From Zootoca vivipara (taxonomy: Eukaryota): a stretch of DNA of 64,000 bases. Location: assembly GCF_963506605.1 (NCBI RefSeq), contig NC_083277.1:20956001-21020000 (forward strand). The letters are read 5' to 3'. The notes under the pieces are model-generated. The model searched no databases. It was given only the letters and a program-made list of their open reading frames with translations, and was not told the DNA's origin. The translations under genes and the position numbers were made by a program. This document shows, piece after piece, positions 6,079 to 64,000 of the stretch (position 1 is the first letter of the stretch; each line of letters starts with the position of its first letter).

Positions 6079-6339
6079 CAGGGGTCGGCAAGGTATACCT
6101 CGCCTGGGCCGGTTCACTCCCGTGGGCCAGATCGTGTCTGCGCAGATGTGATTTCCGGCGTCTGCGCAGACGCGATTTCCGGTGCCATGGAAGCGAGTTC
6201 CCGCTCCGCGCTGCACCTGCTTAGTGTAGCGCACGGGGACTCGCTGAGCGGGCGGCTCAGTTCGGGGGCGGCTCTTGGGCTGTTTAAACGACCCCCGTGG
6301 ACCGCTTGTGGCCCATGGGCCACAGGTTGCCAACCCCTG
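6079..6339. mobile_element. hAT non-autonomous element
   Basis: CAGGGGT...ACCCCTG termini; 8-bp TSD TTGTAGGG (6071-6078, 6340-6347). Confidence 0.88.
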
Positions 6340-9478: not shown

Positions 9479-10243
9479 GTTGTTGTTGTTGTTTAGTCGT
9501 TTAGTCGTGTCCGACTCTTCGTGACCCCATGGACCATAGCACGCCATAAACTTGGATTACTGTGATGTTAAAAGGTCTGCCTTGGATTCGTATCGAGATC
9601 ATTCTGTCATTTTTGAGATTGCATCCCATTACAGCTTTTGCCACTCTTTTGTTGACTATGAGGGCCACTCCATTTCTTCTACAGGATTCTTGCCCACAGT
9701 AGTAGATATGATAGTCACCCGAACTGAATTCGCCCATTCCCTTCCATTTTAGTTCACTGATGCCCAGGATGTCGATATTTATTCTTGTCATCTCATTTTT
9801 GACCACATCCAGCTTACCTCCATTCATGGTTCTTACATTCCAGATTCCTATGCAATATTTTTCTTTACAGCATTGGACTTTCCTTTCGCTTCCAGGCATA
9901 TCCGCAACTGAGCGACCTTTCGGCTTTGGCCCAGCCGCTTCATCAGCTCTGAATCTACTTGTACTTGTCCTCCGCTCTTCCTCAGTAGCATGTTGGACGC
10001 CTTCCGACCTGAGGGGTTCATCTTCCAGCGTCATAACTTTTATATGCCTGTTGTCTTTGTCCATGGAGTTTTCTTGGCAGGGATACTGGAGTGGCTTGCC
10101 AGTTCCTTCTCCAGGTGGATCACGTTTAGTCAAGACTCTCCACTATGACCTGTCCGTCTTGGGTGGCCCTGCATGGCATAGCTCATAGCTTCTCTGAGTT
10201 ATTCAAGCCCCTTCGCCATGACAAGGCATTGATCCACGAAGGG
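9479..10243 (-). mobile_element. Internally deleted BovB (5' UTR plus APE N-terminus joined to 3' tail)
   Basis: ORF 9501-10133 has APE motifs IGIWNVRTM and DILGISELKW; (CAA)n tail; TSD GCTGGTACAT 9469-9478 and 10244-10253. Confidence 0.88.
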
Positions 10244-12803: not shown

Positions 12804-13723
12804 AATAAAAAAATCCTTCCAGTAGCACCTTGGAGACCAACTAAGTTTGTCATACGGTAGGGATGAGCTTTCGTGTGCATGCACACTTCTTCAGATACAC
12901 TGAAACAGAAGTCACCAGACCCTTATGTATAGTCAGAGGGTGGGGAGGGGTATTACTCAGAAGGGTGGTGGGAATTTTTCTGTAATAAAACAGCTACTTT
13001 GAGATCTTGTATAGAATGTCCTGGGAGATTGAAATGTTCTCCTACTGGTTTCTCTGTCTTGTGATTCCTGATGTCAGATTTATGTCCATTTATCCTTTGG
13101 CGTAGGGTTTGGCCTGTTTGTCCAATATAGAGAGCTGAAGGGCACCGTTGGCATTTGATGGCATACACAATGTTAGAAGATGAGCAATTAAATAGTCCTG
13201 AGATGGTATGTTTGATGTTGTTGGGGCCAGTGATGGTGTTGTCCGGGTGTATGTGGCAGCAAAGTTGGCATCTGGGTTTATTGCATTACCATCAGAATTT
13301 CAGAAACAGACTGGAAAGAGAAGTTTCTGAATTGCAACTCATCACCAAGCTTAAAACCATGGAGAGACCTGGTCTGAATAAGGACACTGGATTCTTATCT
13401 CATTATACATGATCAAGCTTTCTTTAGCACCTCAGCCCTTGCTTTTTCCTGCAAGACCAATTGCAGTCGTTAACAGTCATCAACAGGTTTACCACTTCTA
13501 TCAGCCAATCACCTATTCCCACCACCCTTCTGAGTAATACTCCTCCCCACCCTCTGACTATACATAAGGGTCTGGTGACTTCTGTTTCAGTGCATCTGAA
13601 GAAGTGTGCATGCACACAAAAGCTCCTACCTATGACAAACTTAGTTGGTCTCTAAGGTGCTACTGGAATGATTTTTTTATTTTGTTTTGACTGCATCAGA
13701 CCAACATGGCTACCTACCTGTAA
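12804..13723. mobile_element. Penelope-like retroelement (Neptune-type) insertion with internal inversion
   Basis: Minus strand 13285-12975 encodes CNKPRCQLC linker plus GIY-YIG (VYAIKC...LYIGQT...RQRINGH). Plus strand 13292-13723 continues the GIY-YIG C-terminus (..GLNKD) and terminal repeat. 14-bp TSD CATCCACT(A/C)TACTA at 12790-12803 and 13724-13737. Confidence 0.9.
12861..12898 (-). ncRNA. Minimal hammerhead ribozyme-like motif in Penelope terminal repeat
   Basis: Minus strand reads GUAU-CUGAAGA-A-GUGUGCAUGCACAC-GAA-AGCU-C-AUCC; core intact, palindromic helix III, one mismatch in helix I. Confidence 0.65.
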
Positions 13724-14541: not shown

Positions 14542-14915
14542 CGTAGGTGCCAAGTTCCGAATTGAAAGATCCCAACATGCGTAGAAGCGACTTCCGATGC
14601 TGCTATGCCCATTTCCAAAATGTCCGCAGCGCCAGAAGTCGCTTCTATGCACTTCTGAACATGCGTAGAAGCGACTTCTGGCGCCGCGGACATTTTGGAA
14701 ATGGGCACAGCAGCATCGGAAGATCGCTTCGACGCATGTCCGGAAGTGCGTAGAAGCGGCTTCCGGTGCCGGTGCGGCACCAGAAGAACATGGCCGCCAG
14801 CAGGAGCTCCATAATCCGGGGGGAATACGGGGTATTTTGCCATTCGGGACACCTGCGGGAAACGGTAAGAAAATACGGGGGTTTCCCGGGAAAAACGGGG
14901 TACTTGGCAGCTATG
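14542..14915. mobile_element. hAT element, CATAGCTGCCAAG family, long CpG-rich form
   Basis: 8-bp TSD TTCTCAGC; internal palindromic GAAGCGACTTC repeats. Confidence 0.85.
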
Positions 14916-21032: not shown

Positions 21033-24000
21033 ATGGTACAAGAGTGCTTTAACTGTATGGTGCAGATGCAAGCTAAGCTGAGCATAGGTGCAGCCAGACT
21101 TCTTCAAGCAGCAAATCTGCTGCCTCAAGACAACAGCTGGGCTGGGCTGCATATCTTTGTTCCATTTAGCATATTGATAGGAATCCCGGATCAGCCTCTG
21201 TGAAATGCCCCAGGCAGAGCGCAGGCAATGCTATTGAACTTACATTTTAAGAAGAACGACTTGTGTGGCCTCCTGTCTTCCAGATAGCCCTTCAGGAGCT
21301 AAGGGGGCAAAGAAGAAAAAGAAAAGTTAAGAAGGCCTGGAAAGGTTGGCAACCCCTGTAGACAAAACCAATGGTCTGACCAAAATAAGGCAGCTTCCAC
21401 GGGTTCCAAGCCAAACCTCAACACATCCAACTTTTAAGTCCGACTGCACTTGCCCTCTTTTCCTGCCATTTCGCTGTTTTTATTGTCTTATGCTCTTCAG
21501 GCAGACTGAGACCTATCCTCTGTAAAGCATCATGCAGATTGATGGCGCTATATCATGAATGAATGGATGGGTGAAGTTTCCCAATGCATGTGGGAGAAAG
21601 GGATGTGGGAGCTCTCTCCTAATTAGAAGCATAGAAATGTTGTCTTGGGAGGGATCCCAAGGGTGGCCTAGAGTGGCTGCGGCAACCCAGCTAGGTGGGT
21701 GAGGTAGAACGAAGAAGAAGAGGAGGAGGAGGAGGAGATGTCCAACTCTCTGCAATACAGCAATCACAGCTAAAAATAATAGAATTGTAGAGTTGGAAGA
21801 GGCCCCGAGGACCATTGAGCAGTCAGGGACTGTGCTGAGGAGGGCTGCATTGAGGAAGAATGGTGGGAGCCTCCCCCTCTCCCCCTCTCCCTGTTCCTGA
21901 TCCTGAATCTTCCCAGGAGCAGGAGGACAGTATAGATTTGGAACAGTGGTTTGCAGAGGGCCATAGTTCAGAAGGCAGAAGCTGGGAAATACTGGATGGG
22001 AAACAGCTAGCAGAAGAAACACTAGGGGAGAGAGAGTTAACAGATTCACAGTCTCTGGATAGTATCCACACACACCCTTCCCCAAAGACATGGAGAGCTC
22101 AGAAAGTGTCAGAACAGAAAGCACAGAGACTACAGACTCAGATTACAAGATGTGGGAGTGACGTGAATTAATAGGGACGGAGGGTGGAGTGACCTTAACT
22201 GGGAGCACCACCATTCTGGTTTGATGCTTTCTTTTGCCCTTCGCTGTGTTTATTAAAGAAACTAACTGGTAAGAATTCCTTTCGTTTGATCTGCTCATTT
22301 ACGGCCACGGGAAGGAAGCTGATTCCCCGAACCCTGACACTATCCCAACCCGATGCAATTCAGTAATATGCAGCTGTCCCACACGGGGATCGAACCTGCA
22401 ACCTTGGCGTTAACAGCACCACGCTCTAAGCAACTGAGCTTAAGAATCCCTGACAAATGAAAAGTTGCAAGTTCACAAAACACAGTCTATTTACCCAGCC
22501 TTCTGTTTCAGATTTCATCTCGTGCCTCTCCTGCCTGTACCACCAAACTCTGCAGAAGACAGGCAGGTGGACAAGCTTGCCAAGGTCTGGGATACTGTTA
22601 CAAACTATTAGGCCAGAGCACTACAATTTTTCAGGGCGCTACTACCTCTTCACCTGCATGTTTGTACTGCTGGGGTGGTATAAGCCAAGTCTGAGCAAGC
22701 TTTCTCCCTGTTTTACGGTCAAAGGAACCAGAGGGTTGCTGTGTGAGTTGGTAGATTTCCGCAGCTCCTTCAAACGTTTGATGAACTCATTATCTTCTAC
22801 ATACCGTAGGCCTAAAGAGTTGGGAGAAAATGTGTGGCTTAGAAATGTAGTTACTGGTCAACCGGTTGCTATAAATGGGAGATCTGGTACTACAGAACAG
22901 TGCTGAAAGCCCACAATAGTCTTTGCCAACCTGGCCCCATCTAGATGTTGTTGGACCACAACTCCCATCAGCCCCAGGCAGTAAGAGCATGCTGGCAAGG
23001 GCTGATTGGAGTTGTAGTCCAGCAATATCTGCCAGGCCAAGTTGGTAATGGCTGGAATAGATGTTGGGACTGGAGTGAGCTAATGGAGCAAGGAATATTG
23101 CTGGTGGCTACCTCAATAGTCCTAGCACAGCTGTCAAATGTGGTACGCTATTAATATTAATGTATGTGTTAGGATAGTAATTTCAAATTTATGTAAGAAT
23201 GTATGGGTTAGGTTTTCCCCTGTATATCCTATACAGTATAATAAAGTCCCTGTGTCTCTGAGTCCAGTCCCTGTGTCCCTGTGTCCGCGCTAATGCGCAT
23301 GTGCCCCACGGACACAGGGACTGGACGAAGAGGTGGGATATACACACGCGTGCGCTCTCTCCCCCCCTCAACCCTCTGCCTTCCGTTCCCCTGCGGTGGC
23401 GGACCAAGATGGCGGCATCGGGCTCCAGGGCCGCGGCGGCGGGAGCCCAGTCCGGCTCCCCCCGCCGCCACCGCGGCCCGCGGCCCCAGAGCCCGATGCC
23501 GCCATCTTGGTCCGCCACCTCCTCCTCCTGACAACCCTACCTGGCCCGTGGGAGGAGCGGCGGGGCCGCGGCCTTCCCTCCCTCTCTGCGCTCGGCCGCG
23601 GGACACGACGGGAGAGCGCTTTGTTTAATTGCATTCCCCGCGCGCCCCGTGGCCGAGCGCAGAAAGGGAGGGAAGGCCGCGGCCCCATCGCACCTCTAGC
23701 GCCCGTTTTCTTAACGGGCTCAATGAGACTAGTTGTATATATTCATATACAGTGGTACCTCGGTTTTCGAAAGCGCCTCAGAAGTCGAACGGCTTCCATT
23801 GAGTGTTTCTCAATTTTCTCAATTAAATTTGCAGACCTCCCTTTGCGCCTCAGTTTTTGAACGTTTCAGAAGTCAAACAGTCTTCCGGAATGGATTACAT
23901 TTGAAAACCGAGGTACCACTGTGATCTGTCTACGAAGAGAAGCTACTCTCTGAGCAGCACTGAGAACAATACACTGTACCTTTTGAACACATTCAAAGCA

Positions 24001-41621: not shown

Positions 41622-41658
41622 ATAAACTGAAAAGGCAACTGACTTGAGCTGTCTTAAG

Positions 41659-42180
41659 ATGCAGGTAGCATGGTTGAAATGCAGATTTCTACGTGCGAGA
41701 CTCCAAAGAACTTTCCCAGCACGGCCAGATGTTGCCACCCCACTCGCTCAACCCTCTGTTCATCATTTGCACATACAAGTAGGAGACAAGGCAGAATTAA
41801 CCAAGACATTTACACAGGAGGATGTTGTTACATTTTCGAAGTTAACAGGAGACACGAACCCATTGCATCTGGATGAAGACTACGCAGGGAGCTCAATATT
41901 TGGCAGGAGAGTTGTACACGGTGTTCTGATCAATGGACTCATCTCTGCTCTTCTGGGTACTAAGATGCCAGGGCATGGCTGTGTTTTTCTTTCTCAGGAA
42001 ATTCGTTTTCCATCCCCGTTATACGTTGGAGAAGAGGTCTTAGTTGCAGCGGAAGTGAAGAAACTGAAGAGATGCCTTGCTTATATTTCCGTCTCCTGTA
42101 CTGTTGCAGAAAGTGGCAAAACAGTGATGGAAGGCACCGTTAAAGTCATGGTGCCAGACGATCAGAAATCACAGATTTGA
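41659..42180 (+). CDS. HTD2: Mitochondrial hydroxyacyl-thioester dehydratase type 2 (mtFAS, hotdog fold), 173 aa, intronless
   Basis: First ATG at 41659 (the track start at 41644 is TTG); Arg/Leu-rich presequence; hydratase-2 motif [18 protein letters not shown] and VHGVL; lies in the RPP14 last exon. Confidence 0.95.
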
Positions 42181-62424: not shown

Positions 62425-63027
62425 CAAGTTACATAAATATGCTGGTTTACGTATAACTGTGCCTGTTGTACAGCAGGGGTGGGCAGAAAGTAGATTGGAA
62501 TCTACTGCTAGGTCTCTGGCTGATTTGCAGCAGATTAGGAAGCGTTTGACTGCCTTTTTATTCAGCAAGCAAAATTACTTTTCCCTCCTGAATTAGACTG
62601 CTGAAATGAAGTAGGGTAATCAGGAAGTGGACGTTTCTAACAAACCTACACCCCCCCCCCAAAAAATACTATACTCCTAGCCACTAGCCAGCAGGAAAAA
62701 AAAGAAAAACCATATTTTTTAATGTTCAGTGGTCTTTTGGTTTAAATCTCTCCCTTCCAGCAAGAAGTCCAGGGTCAAGACAGCTGCTGTAAAGTGGTGT
62801 GTTTGTGTTTCTTTGTGATCCCACGGCTCCCTTCTCTTGCAGAGAAAGCAGCAGAAAATGCATAGCAAGGAGAGAGAGTTGTTCCAGCTGTGCATCCTCT
62901 TCTGTCTCTAGTAAATGCACCAATAAAAAACAGACCAAGAACCCAGGCCAATATAAGATTCAATAGTGAGAATAATCCCTAGTAACAAATCAAATATGAA
63001 TTTGCAAAAACAAGAATACATATAGTC

Positions 63028-63426
63028 CAGGCGTTGGCAACGTTTTCTGCTCGCGGGCCAGAGGATTCCCACGGACTATTGTCCGTGGGCCAGACATGGG
63101 CCGCACAGGCGCAGAAGCGATTTCTGGTGGCGCTGCGGACATTTTGGAAATGGGCAGCACAGCACCAGAAATGGCTTCTGCGCATGTCCACAGCTGCGTA
63201 GAAGCGATTTCCGGTGCTGGCTGCCCATTTCCAAAATGTCCGCAGCGCCAGAATGCACTTCTGTGGCTGCATAGACGCGATTTCTGGTGCTGCTCGGCGA
63301 GTCCCTGCGTCACGCTGCACCTGTTTACCGCAGCATGTGGGGGACTTGCCGGGTGGGCAGCTCAGTTCACGGGCAGCCCATGGGCCGGATAAACGGCCTC
63401 CGTGGGCCGGAGGTTGCCAGTGCCTG
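63028..63426. mobile_element. hAT non-autonomous element
   Basis: CAGGC...GCCTG ends; 8-bp TSD ATATAGTC. Confidence 0.85.
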
Positions 63427-63595
63427 ATATAGTCATACAGAAGTTGTAAACTCAAAACTACAATAATCTGTTACAGCATTAGATGCGAGAGTCTTTAAAT
63501 TGGGTCGAGTTCATGCTAGTCCAAAATCAGGATATATCAATGTCGTGTTTGATGTAGAAGTCTTAAAGTCTCAATCATTAATCAGAAATCAGAAG

Positions 63596-63639
63596 CCAGG
63601 ACAGGGCCCTGTTTCGGTGTCTTCACCTTCATCAGCTGG
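63596..63639 (-). ncRNA. Type I hammerhead ribozyme motif
   Basis: CCAG-CUGAUGA-A-GGUG(AAGA)CACC-GAA-ACAGGGCCCUGU-C-CUGG; all core nucleotides and three helices present; GUC cleavage triplet. Confidence 0.82.
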
Positions 63640-64000
63640 AAGTATTAAACATTACAGTACATGAAAACACATTTATGAACTGGTTACATGAATTGAAATT
63701 GAAATTATAAGTCATTAAACAACATTTAAACGTGTGGTTCCTCACCTGCTTTAAAACTTGCTCTAAAAAAAACTAATTAACGAGCAATTTTGGGTAGAGC
63801 TGTACCTCTTTGCAATTAGAGTCTCGAGTGTGCTCCGGGGATTTGTGTTTAAAGTCTGAAATGAAAAATAAATGAAATGGGCAACCTGAGATTGCCTTGA
63901 TGTAAGGAGGAGGCCATAACATATAGAAATAAATGGCTTCTACGTTAGTTCTCTGGAGAGCACTTCTATTTATTTTGCTACTCATGGTTAGGGTAGGGTG

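What the first reader, a model, noticed from the sequence alone, without database searches (positions are those of the whole stretch)
63596..63639. Intact minimal hammerhead ribozyme motif antisense within PXK intron 1
Seen: perfect helix I (CCAG/CUGG), CUGAUGA, one extra A, helix II GGUG/CACC with an AAGA loop, GAAA, a 12-nt perfect palindrome ACAGGGCCCUGU as helix III, and a GUC triplet (predicted cut between 63600 and 63599). It is unrelated in sequence to the other Penelope motif here and has no recognisable ORF nearby. Established: such motifs mark Penelope terminal repeats and retrozymes, and some amniote intronic hammerheads are conserved. Inference: a second, possibly uncatalogued ribozyme-bearing element occupying about 63435-64000, or a retained self-cleaving RNA.
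Basis: partly seen in the sequence, partly recalled or inferred. Interest (0 to 1): 0.8.

Follow-up and report, generated by a model that had tools for sequence, protein, structure and literature searches.

The report
Penelope-type hammerhead in a lizard-specific repeat
The hammerhead ribozyme motif is really there and complete, but it sits in a dispersed repeat of the Penelope retrotransposon type that three related species lack at this site, so it is an ordinary transposon relic and not a conserved ribozyme of the host gene.

Summary

- **Chance:** a strict descriptor hits 0.0018 times per shuffled 64-kb window. That would still give tens of chance hits per genome. What argues against chance is that the stretch is multi-copy.
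- **Type:** the motif shows the published hallmarks of metazoan Penelope-like-element (PLE) minimal hammerheads: a nucleotide between A9 and G10.1, a G10.1-C11.1 pair, a 4-bp helix I and a palindromic helix III.
- **Folding:** the monomer is predicted to misfold. Two 44-nt cores are predicted to form exactly the double hammerhead.
- **Not conserved:** single-copy contigs of three related species join 62907-62909 directly to 63746, so about 62909-63715 is missing at their orthologous site.
- **Repeat family:** the hammerhead stretch is nevertheless multi-copy in all three species.
- **Nested element:** a 399-bp hAT-like MITE (63028-63426, 8-bp target-site duplication ATATAGTC) lies inside the inserted block.
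- **No ORF, tandem partner or cleavage signature** was found.

Verdict: a dead copy of a PLE-type hammerhead-bearing repeat, and a new member of a known kind. The scan has already found PLE hammerheads elsewhere in this genome.

The parts
63596..63639 (-). Complete minimal type-I hammerhead motif. Helix I CCAG/CUGG, CUGAUGA, unpaired A between A9 and G10.1, helix II GGUG-AAGA-CACC, GAA, 12-nt palindromic helix III ACAGGGCCCUGU, C17. Cut predicted between 63600 and 63599.
   Evidence: Weak Rfam HH9 match at the same coordinates. Shuffle controls. The predicted dimer of the 44-nt core is the double hammerhead.
63640..63715 (-). 76-nt AT-rich (24% GC) part of the repeat 5' of the hammerhead, probably a 5'-truncated pseudo-LTR remnant. 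Right edge of the lineage-specific insertion.
   Evidence: Contigs of the relatives match up to 63704-63712 (table 8). Single-copy orthologous contigs resume at 63746, and the 32-33 letters they carry in between partly resemble 63716-63745 by eye. GC content.
63467..63595 (-). Part of the repeat 3' of the cut site, about 129 nt, non-coding and not unusually structured. The family similarity seems to end near 63467-63473.
   Evidence: Multi-copy depth in three relatives, a contig piece covering 63467-63571, six RNA read starts at 63473, and depth roughly halving in bin 63451-63500. Stops in all frames. Fold z-score +2.27.
63028..63426 (.). Nested 399-bp GC-rich MITE with terminal inverted repeats CAGGCGTTGGCAAC and CAGGCACTGGCAAC (reverse complement of the right end), and internal palindromes. 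hAT-like by its 8-bp target-site duplication.
   Evidence: Related copies at 14575-14772 and 6162-6304. Very high depth in relative C.
63020..63027 (.). Left copy of the perfect 8-bp target-site duplication ATATAGTC of the MITE.
63427..63434 (.). Right copy of the target-site duplication ATATAGTC.
62909..63019 (.). Very abundant AT-rich repeat piece that was contiguous with 63435 onward before the MITE inserted. It is either the 3' continuation of the hammerhead element on the minus strand or a separate + strand retroposon fragment with an A-rich end. This is unresolved. It is also absent from the orthologous site of the relatives.
   Evidence: highest depths of the stretch; other copies continue left of 62909; an A-rich loose end lies behind 63001; one colinear contig in species B bridges 62989 to 63600. 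Reconstruction.
63435..63466 (.). A-rich stretch between the MITE target-site duplication and the apparent end of the hammerhead family. Which element it belongs to is unresolved.

Best explanation
The motif is the hammerhead of a dispersed, non-coding retroelement copy of the Penelope-like-element (PLE) kind. It is either a 5'-truncated PLE end piece (pseudo-LTR remnant, hammerhead and tail) or a PLE-dependent non-autonomous derivative. The copy inserted in minus orientation into a + strand intron in this lizard's lineage, and a hAT-like MITE inserted beside or inside it later. In the parent element the hammerhead is built to work as a dimer. Its 12-nt palindrome forms an intermolecular helix III, and helix I forms in trans, so two copies (tandem units or two transcripts) build two active sites that process the element's RNA, probably helped by the element's protein. 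At this locus the copy is solitary and antisense to the host transcript, and shows no sign of cutting, so it is most likely inert. Shown here: the motif, its multi-copy nature, its absence at the orthologous site, and the nested MITE. Inferred: the PLE parentage, which rests on the hammerhead architecture and the published literature and not on a linked RT/GIY-YIG ORF; the dimer mechanism, which is a thermodynamic prediction only; and the inertness.
For: All core nucleotides and all three helices are present. [quoted passage not shown] That paper also reports such motifs in reptiles, mostly as single dispersed copies from truncated PLEs. The monomer hammerhead fold is -8.6 kcal/mol against an MFE of -12.2, about 0.2% occupancy. 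The predicted dimer MFE of the 44-nt core, -37.9 kcal/mol, is exactly the double hammerhead. Orthologous single-copy contigs of three relatives skip 62908-63745 (table 5). In bin 63601-63650 the summed contig depth is 3426/975/247 against single-copy depths of 42/10.4/3.5, the local maximum of the 63451-63700 stretch (table 2). The hammerhead is a 59% GC island in flanks of 24-34% GC. The MITE has terminal inverted repeats and a perfect 8-bp target-site duplication. Earlier follow-ups of this scan filed other hammerheads of this genome as PLE-derived; these are unchecked leads.
Against: No RT or GIY-YIG ORF is linked to this copy, and all frames carry stops. I could not see other copies letter by letter, so conservation and covariation of the hammerhead within the family are not shown. 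Helix II is only 4 bp, whereas the PLE hammerheads described for Schistosoma have 7-8 bp. Rfam models do not reach threshold. With 10-30 nt of flank the predicted dimer keeps the 12-bp helix III but rearranges the rest. Depth is summed over contigs and is not a copy number.
Confidence: 0.8

Rival explanations
1. It is a monomer of a non-LTR retrozyme family. Tandem hammerhead units elsewhere in the genome would be transcribed, self-cleave as dimers and circularise, and PLE machinery would copy them back. This locus would be a dead single-unit offspring. This is a sub-case of the best explanation and does not oppose it.
For: The copy is non-coding, a few hundred nt long, and has a single type-I hammerhead with a palindromic helix III. 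The preprint 10.64898/2026.07.22.740005 reports non-LTR retrozymes in 4 of 5 sampled reptiles, with evenly dispersed monomers (shown in Xenopus) and descent from PLE pseudo-LTRs.
Against: There is no tandem or second unit at this locus. No head-to-tail joints over the hammerhead stretch were listed for the contigs of the relatives or for the RNA reads. The contigs are short, so this is weak evidence.
Confidence: 0.25
2. It is a chance hammerhead-like motif. The letters arose by accident in one copy of an unrelated AT-rich repeat and have no ribozyme history.
For: The strict descriptor occurs 0.0018 times per shuffled window, which means tens of chance hits in a genome of more than a gigabase. 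A CUGAUGA...CGAAA stretch at 9946-9918 lies inside an ORF with a sub-threshold Exo_endo_phos match and is such an accident. Rfam scores are sub-threshold.
Against: No shuffled hit had a fully palindromic helix III. Three features not required by the descriptor match the PLE class: the extra nucleotide, G10.1-C11.1 and the palindrome. The hammerhead bin is the most abundant part of the 63451-63700 stretch in all three relatives, as expected if it is the conserved part.
Confidence: 0.08
3. It is a functional host ribozyme: an antisense or intronic self-cleaving RNA kept by selection, like the amniote HH9/HH10 hammerheads, that acts on PXK expression.
For: The core is intact, and the best (weak) Rfam match is HH9. 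Some minus-strand-sense reads lie on 63473-63622.
Against: The block is absent at the orthologous site in three related species. The motif is antisense to the transcribed strand. At least six reads, which may be duplicates and may come from other copies, cross the cut site uncut, and no read ends pile up at 63599/63600. There is no tertiary-contact loop, and the monomer misfolds.
Confidence: 0.03

Closest known systems
Minimal hammerheads of metazoan Penelope-like elements (Cervera & De la Pena 2014, PMC4209133; Lunse, Weinberg & Breaker, cited in PMC6765202)
   Same: Type-I topology. An unpaired nucleotide between A9 and G10.1. A G10.1-C11.1 pair. A 4-bp helix I without loop-loop contacts. 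A palindromic helix III implying dimeric action. Dispersed, mostly solitary copies. Present in reptiles.
   Different: Helix III is a full 12-nt palindrome (4 bp plus a GGCC loop as a monomer, 12 bp as a dimer) where the commonest variants have 0-2 bp. Helix II is 4 bp where Schistosoma has 7-8 bp. No PLE ORF is linked here.
PAc (Poseidon of Anolis carolinensis) hammerhead, PMC11167929
   Same: A lizard PLE hammerhead at the pseudo-LTR/ORF junction. It is inactive alone and protein-assisted in vitro. No RNA-seq ends were found at its cut site, as here. Genomic copies end a short distance 3' of the hammerhead at internal reverse-transcription start sites.
   Different: In PAc the ORF starts at stem II and continues. 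Here the AUG inside CUGAUGA opens only 16 codons. The sequences could not be compared because the PAc sequence is not held in the text or supplements.
Common PLE minimal hammerhead of this genome (example in this window, minus strand 12894-12869)
   Same: The same class: CUGAAGA, an extra A, a palindromic helix II, and GAAAGCUC with the palindrome AGCU.
   Different: No sequence similarity outside the core. That variant has essentially no helix III, whereas this one has a 12-nt palindrome.
Animal non-LTR retrozymes (PMC7229834; preprint 10.64898/2026.07.22.740005)
   Same: Short non-coding units with dimer-type type-I hammerheads, derived from PLE pseudo-LTRs, with dispersed monomers.
   Different: Retrozymes are defined by tandem units and circular RNAs. 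Neither was seen for this locus.
Conserved amniote intronic hammerheads HH9/HH10 (Rfam RF02275, RF02277)
   Same: An intronic location and the same catalytic core. HH9 is the best Rfam match.
   Different: 11.8 bits against a gathering score of 52. Not conserved at the orthologous site, antisense to the host transcript, and without the long helices and tertiary loops.

Membership tests
Hammerhead ribozyme (motif level) | Conserved core C3 U4 G5 A6 N7 G8 A9, G12 A13 A14, A15.1-U16.1, H17 | tested here: met
   All are present on the minus strand 63635-63600, with N7 = U and H17 = C.
Hammerhead ribozyme (motif level) | Three helices around the core | tested here: met
   Helix I 4 bp, helix II 4 bp, helix III 4 bp with a GGCC loop, or 12 bp between two molecules.
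Hammerhead ribozyme (motif level) | Reaches the gathering score of an Rfam hammerhead model | tested here: not met
   No hit at gathering score. HH9 scores 11.8 bits against 52, E = 5.2.
Hammerhead ribozyme (motif level) | Mg2+-dependent self-cleavage 3' of H17 | not testable with these tools
   No read ends pile up at 63599/63600 in one RNA run, of which only about 6% was read. This does not decide the matter.
Metazoan PLE minimal hammerhead | [quoted passage not shown] | tested here: met
   A at 63628. Criterion from PMC4209133.
Metazoan PLE minimal hammerhead | G10.1-C11.1 pair | tested here: met
   G at 63627 pairs with C at 63616.
Metazoan PLE minimal hammerhead | Palindromic 15.2-16.2 / loop 3, so that two motifs form an extended helix III | tested here: met
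   ACAGGGCCCUGU is a perfect 12-nt palindrome. The cofold MFE of the 44-nt core is the double hammerhead, -37.9 kcal/mol.
Metazoan PLE minimal hammerhead | Multi-copy consensus families with compensatory changes | tested here: inconclusive
   The multi-copy nature is shown in three relatives.
Metazoan PLE minimal hammerhead | Lies in the pseudo-LTR of an element encoding RT and GIY-YIG endonuclease | tested here: inconclusive
   The copy has no ORF. Most genomic PLE hammerheads are solitary truncated copies. The parent element could not be searched.
Non-LTR retrozyme | Head-to-tail tandem units, each with a hammerhead | tested here: not met
   There is no second unit or internal tandem at this locus. 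The window ends 361 nt upstream of the motif.
Non-LTR retrozyme | Circular RNA joined at the cleavage site | tested here: inconclusive
   No such joint was listed in the RNA run. Sampling was shallow.
Conserved amniote intronic hammerhead (HH9/HH10 type) | Orthologous conservation across species | tested here: not met
   Single-copy contigs of three relatives join 62907-62909 to 63746 without the block.
hAT-like MITE (the nested element) | Terminal inverted repeats and an 8-bp target-site duplication | tested here: met
   The 14-nt terminal repeats match at 12 of 14 positions, and ATATAGTC is duplicated perfectly. Assignment to the hAT superfamily rests on the 8-bp duplication alone.

The most novel reading that the evidence does not exclude
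The copy is not inert. Minus-strand transcripts of this and sister copies pair through the shared 12-nt palindrome and cut each other in trans, so that a lineage-specific antisense self-cleaving RNA (or a retrozyme-type circular RNA) arises inside the PXK intron and affects the host gene.
Probability: 0.03. Interest if true: 0.55.

Novelty: new member of a known kind. Interest (0 to 1): 0.15.

Why it matters
It matters little beyond annotation. It adds a second hammerhead sequence family, with an unusually long 12-nt palindromic helix III, to the Penelope-type ribozymes of a lacertid-type lizard. It also illustrates that an intact hammerhead core in an intron need not be a host ribozyme. The presence/absence difference between species and the nested MITE give a relative order of the insertions. 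If the family turned out to form tandem arrays and circular RNAs, it would be one more reptile retrozyme.

Tried and rejected
- **Rfam:** the gathering scan found nothing at the motif. The E-value scan gave only a sub-threshold HH9 match.
- **More copies in the window:** BLAST of 63000-64000, of 62880-63030 and of the MITE-free 400-nt reconstruction found no second copy.
- **Metagenome pattern scans:** the first found nothing. The second found three near-identical ORF-free contigs with a look-alike motif that lacks a proper helix I. They are not relatives.
- **Earlier findings of this scan:** look-ups by sequence and by relatives were blank.
- **Paper supplements:** supplements of PMC11167929 and of the 2026 preprint hold no matching letters. 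The Lunse et al. paper is not held.
- **ORF starting in the hammerhead, as in PAc:** there are only 16 codons before a stop, and stops in all frames. Rejected.
- **Tandem or retrozyme layout at the locus:** none found.
- **Other CUGANGA...GAAA stretches:** 9946-9918 lies inside an ORF with a sub-threshold Exo_endo_phos match and is chance. 21500-21469 does not fit the descriptor.
- **Structured 3' part:** the fold is less stable than shuffles, z = +2.27. A small hairpin with an AC-rich loop at about 63553-63536 recalls the PAc reverse-transcription start, but this was not testable.
- **One contig of species B joining 62989 to 63600 (exactly C17):** its short side is only 30 nt at 80% likeness, so I left it unexplained.

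Full report
**Observation.**
The minus strand of 63639-63596 reads CCAG CUGAUGA A GGUG AAGA CACC GAA ACAGGGCCCUGU C CUGG. This is a complete type-I hammerhead:
- helix I is CCAG/CUGG;
- the core C3-A9 is present;
- one unpaired A precedes G10.1;
- helix II is 4 bp with an AAGA loop;
- G12-A14 is present;
- helix III runs from A15.1 to U16.1 and is a perfect 12-nt palindrome;
- C17 is at 63600, so the scissile bond lies between 63600 and 63599.

**Chance.**
A descriptor I wrote finds this as the only hit in the window on either strand. Dinucleotide-preserving shuffles give 0.13 hits per window for the loose form. The strict form (all three helices at least 4 bp) gives 5 hits in 2844 windows, 0.0018 per window, and none of those has a fully palindromic helix III. 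The motif is therefore unexpected in one window. A genome of more than a gigabase would still hold tens of strict-descriptor accidents, so the descriptor alone does not settle it. One such accident is in this window: CUGAUGA...CGAAA at 9946-9918 lies inside an ORF with a sub-threshold Exo_endo_phos match. Twelve-nt palindromes as such are common here, 36 in the window. Rfam does not call the motif. There is nothing at gathering score, and only Hammerhead_HH9 at 11.8 bits against 52 (E = 5.2) over exactly these coordinates.

**Architecture.**
Cervera and De la Pena (PMC4209133) list features of metazoan Penelope-like-element (PLE) minimal hammerheads that their search descriptor did not require:
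- a conserved G10.1-C11.1 pair;
- palindromic 15.2-16.2 and loop 3;
- a short helix I of 4-5 bp.

All four are met here. [quoted passage not shown]

**Folding.**
Folding supports the dimer design. As a monomer the 44-mer prefers a CAGGGC/GUCCUG hairpin that buries the cut site (MFE -12.2 kcal/mol). The hammerhead fold is worth -8.6, about 0.2% of the ensemble. Two molecules have as their MFE (-37.9 kcal/mol, against 2 x -12.2 for two monomers) exactly the double hammerhead, with a 12-bp intermolecular helix III and helix I formed in trans. With 10-30 nt of flank the 12-bp helix III persists but the rest of the prediction shifts. These are predictions and not measurements.

**Context and relatives.**
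Reads and contigs of four runs were laid on 62501-64000.
- *Absent at the orthologous site.* In three related species (coded B, C and D) the single-copy orthologous contigs (depths 42.1, 10.4 and 3.5) join 62907-62909 directly to 63746. For B and C, 32-33 other letters are listed in between; for D the letters between are not known. By eye those letters partly resemble 63716-63745. About 62909-63715 is therefore missing at their orthologous site. Flank divergence is roughly 5-12%, so these are not very close relatives.
- *Made of repeats.* The missing block consists entirely of repeats that are multi-copy in all three species. For the hammerhead bin 63601-63650 the summed depth is 3426/975/247. 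That is the local maximum of the 63451-63700 stretch and far above the single-copy depths.
- *Copies in the relatives.* Contig pieces cover 63467-63571, 63582-63704, 63594-63704, 63608-63689 and 63622-63712 with about 5-16% mismatches.

The hammerhead therefore belongs to a dispersed repeat family shared by at least four species. This particular copy is either a lineage-specific insertion or, less parsimoniously, was lost once in a common ancestor of the three relatives. Either way it is not a conserved intronic ribozyme.

**Structure of the block.**
63028-63426 is a MITE. Its terminal inverted repeats are CAGGCGTTGGCAAC and the reverse complement of CAGGCACTGGCAAC, and it is flanked by a perfect 8-bp target-site duplication ATATAGTC at 63020-63027 and 63427-63434. 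The 8-bp duplication is the hAT hallmark. The MITE has relatives at 14575-14772 and 6162-6304.

Removing the MITE and one copy of the duplication joins 62909-63027 to 63435-63715 into 400 nt. On the minus strand the hammerhead is at nt 77-120 of this reconstruction. All frames carry stops, and there is no internal tandem. The AUG inside CUGAUGA opens only 16 codons.

The hammerhead family proper seems to end near 63467-63473, judged from a contig piece start, six RNA read starts and the halving of depth. Whether 62909-63027 belongs to it is unresolved.
- In favour of a separate + strand retroposon fragment: this piece is much more abundant, it has an A-rich end on the + strand, and other copies continue to its left.
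- In favour of one element: one colinear contig in species B links 62989 to 63600. This is weak evidence.

**Expression.**
The RNA run behaves as a stranded library. Unique intron sequence at 62551-62900 gives only first-mate-on-minus reads, which under the usual convention means + strand RNA. This fits a + strand host gene downstream of the HTD2 MaoC ORF at 41644-42180. The hammerhead is thus antisense to the host transcript.

A handful of first-mate-on-plus reads cover 63473-63622. Six begin at the same base, 63473, so they may be duplicates. Their computed span crosses the predicted cut site uncut. Most laid reads are under 95% alike, so these probably come from other copies. No pile-up of ends at 63599/63600 was listed. 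Only about 6% of the run was read, so this is weak negative evidence. The Anolis PAc study also found no reads ending at its hammerhead cut site, and found cleavage only with the element's protein (PMC11167929).

**Mechanism.**
The motif is the processing ribozyme of a PLE-type retroelement. In transcripts that carry two units, or in two transcripts, the palindromic helix III pairs and two composite active sites form. Cleavage 3' of C17 then trims the element RNA, probably helped by the element's RT-EN protein. New copies arise by target-primed reverse transcription that begins a short distance 3' of the hammerhead (PMC11167929) and are often 5'-truncated. The copy here (76 nt, then the 44-nt hammerhead, then about 129 nt) has that shape.

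PLE parentage is inferred from the architecture and the literature. No RT/GIY-YIG ORF is linked, and I could not read the other copies to test covariation. A non-autonomous, retrozyme-type family (PMC7229834; preprint 10.64898/2026.07.22.740005) is a sub-case that I cannot exclude. Its defining tandem layout and circular RNAs were not seen at this locus.

**Comparison and novelty.**
This hammerhead differs in sequence from the common PLE hammerhead of this genome, of which an example sits at 12894-12869 (CUGAAGA A GUGUGCAUGCACAC GAAAGCUC). Its helix III palindrome is also longer than in most described PLE variants. The kind has been described since 2014, and earlier follow-ups of this scan filed several hammerheads of this lacertid-type lizard as PLE-derived (these are unchecked leads). 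I rate it a new member of a known kind, of low interest.

**Limits.**
No eukaryotic genome search was available. The single read-laying run does not show the letters of other copies. 'PXK intron 1' was not verified directly.

Noticed in passing
window 63028-63426 (target-site duplications at 63020-63027 and 63427-63434): 399-bp GC-rich MITE with 14-nt terminal inverted repeats, a perfect 8-bp target-site duplication ATATAGTC, and a perfect 31-nt internal inverted repeat (63128-63158 / 63220-63250). Related copies lie at 14575-14772 and 6162-6304. It is extremely abundant in related species C, and RNA reads fall on both strands.
   Followed up: partly
window 12869-12894, minus strand: Typical PLE minimal hammerhead, CUGAAGA A GUGUGCAUGCACAC GAAAGCUC: helix II is palindromic and helix III is reduced to the palindrome AGCU. 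Only 2 bp of helix I are visible, so my descriptor missed it.
   Followed up: partly
window 9501-10133, minus strand: 210-codon ORF with a sub-threshold Pfam Exo_endo_phos match (19.6 bits against a cut-off of 24.5), which looks like the endonuclease part of an RTE/BovB-like LINE. It contains a chance CUGAUGA...CGAAA stretch at 9946-9918.
   Followed up: partly
window 62909-63027: The most abundant repeat piece of the stretch in species B (summed depth up to 7762 against a single-copy depth of 42), AT-rich, with other copies continuing to its left. Its identity and its relation to the hammerhead element are unresolved.
   Followed up: partly
window 22383-22440, minus strand: Partial tRNA match (Rfam RF00005, 33.5 bits, model positions 9-63), possibly the head of a tRNA-derived SINE.
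   Followed up: no
L001 6906-6933, L002 6883-6910, L003 9767-9794: Three near-identical metagenome contigs carry CAGCUGAUGA U GGUG AUCA CACC GAAAC AUGU, a look-alike with an extra U and the palindrome ACAUGU but no adjacent helix I. L003, the only one checked, has no ORF of 150 aa or more in 11 kb, so it is probably eukaryotic host DNA.
   Followed up: partly
window 62989 / 63600: One contig of related species B joins 62989 colinearly to 63600, which is exactly C17 of the hammerhead. The letters between are unknown and the short side is only 30 nt. It is either a real link between the two repeat parts or a spurious low-likeness match.
   Followed up: no
It shares no similarity with the motif studied here.
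   Followed up: no
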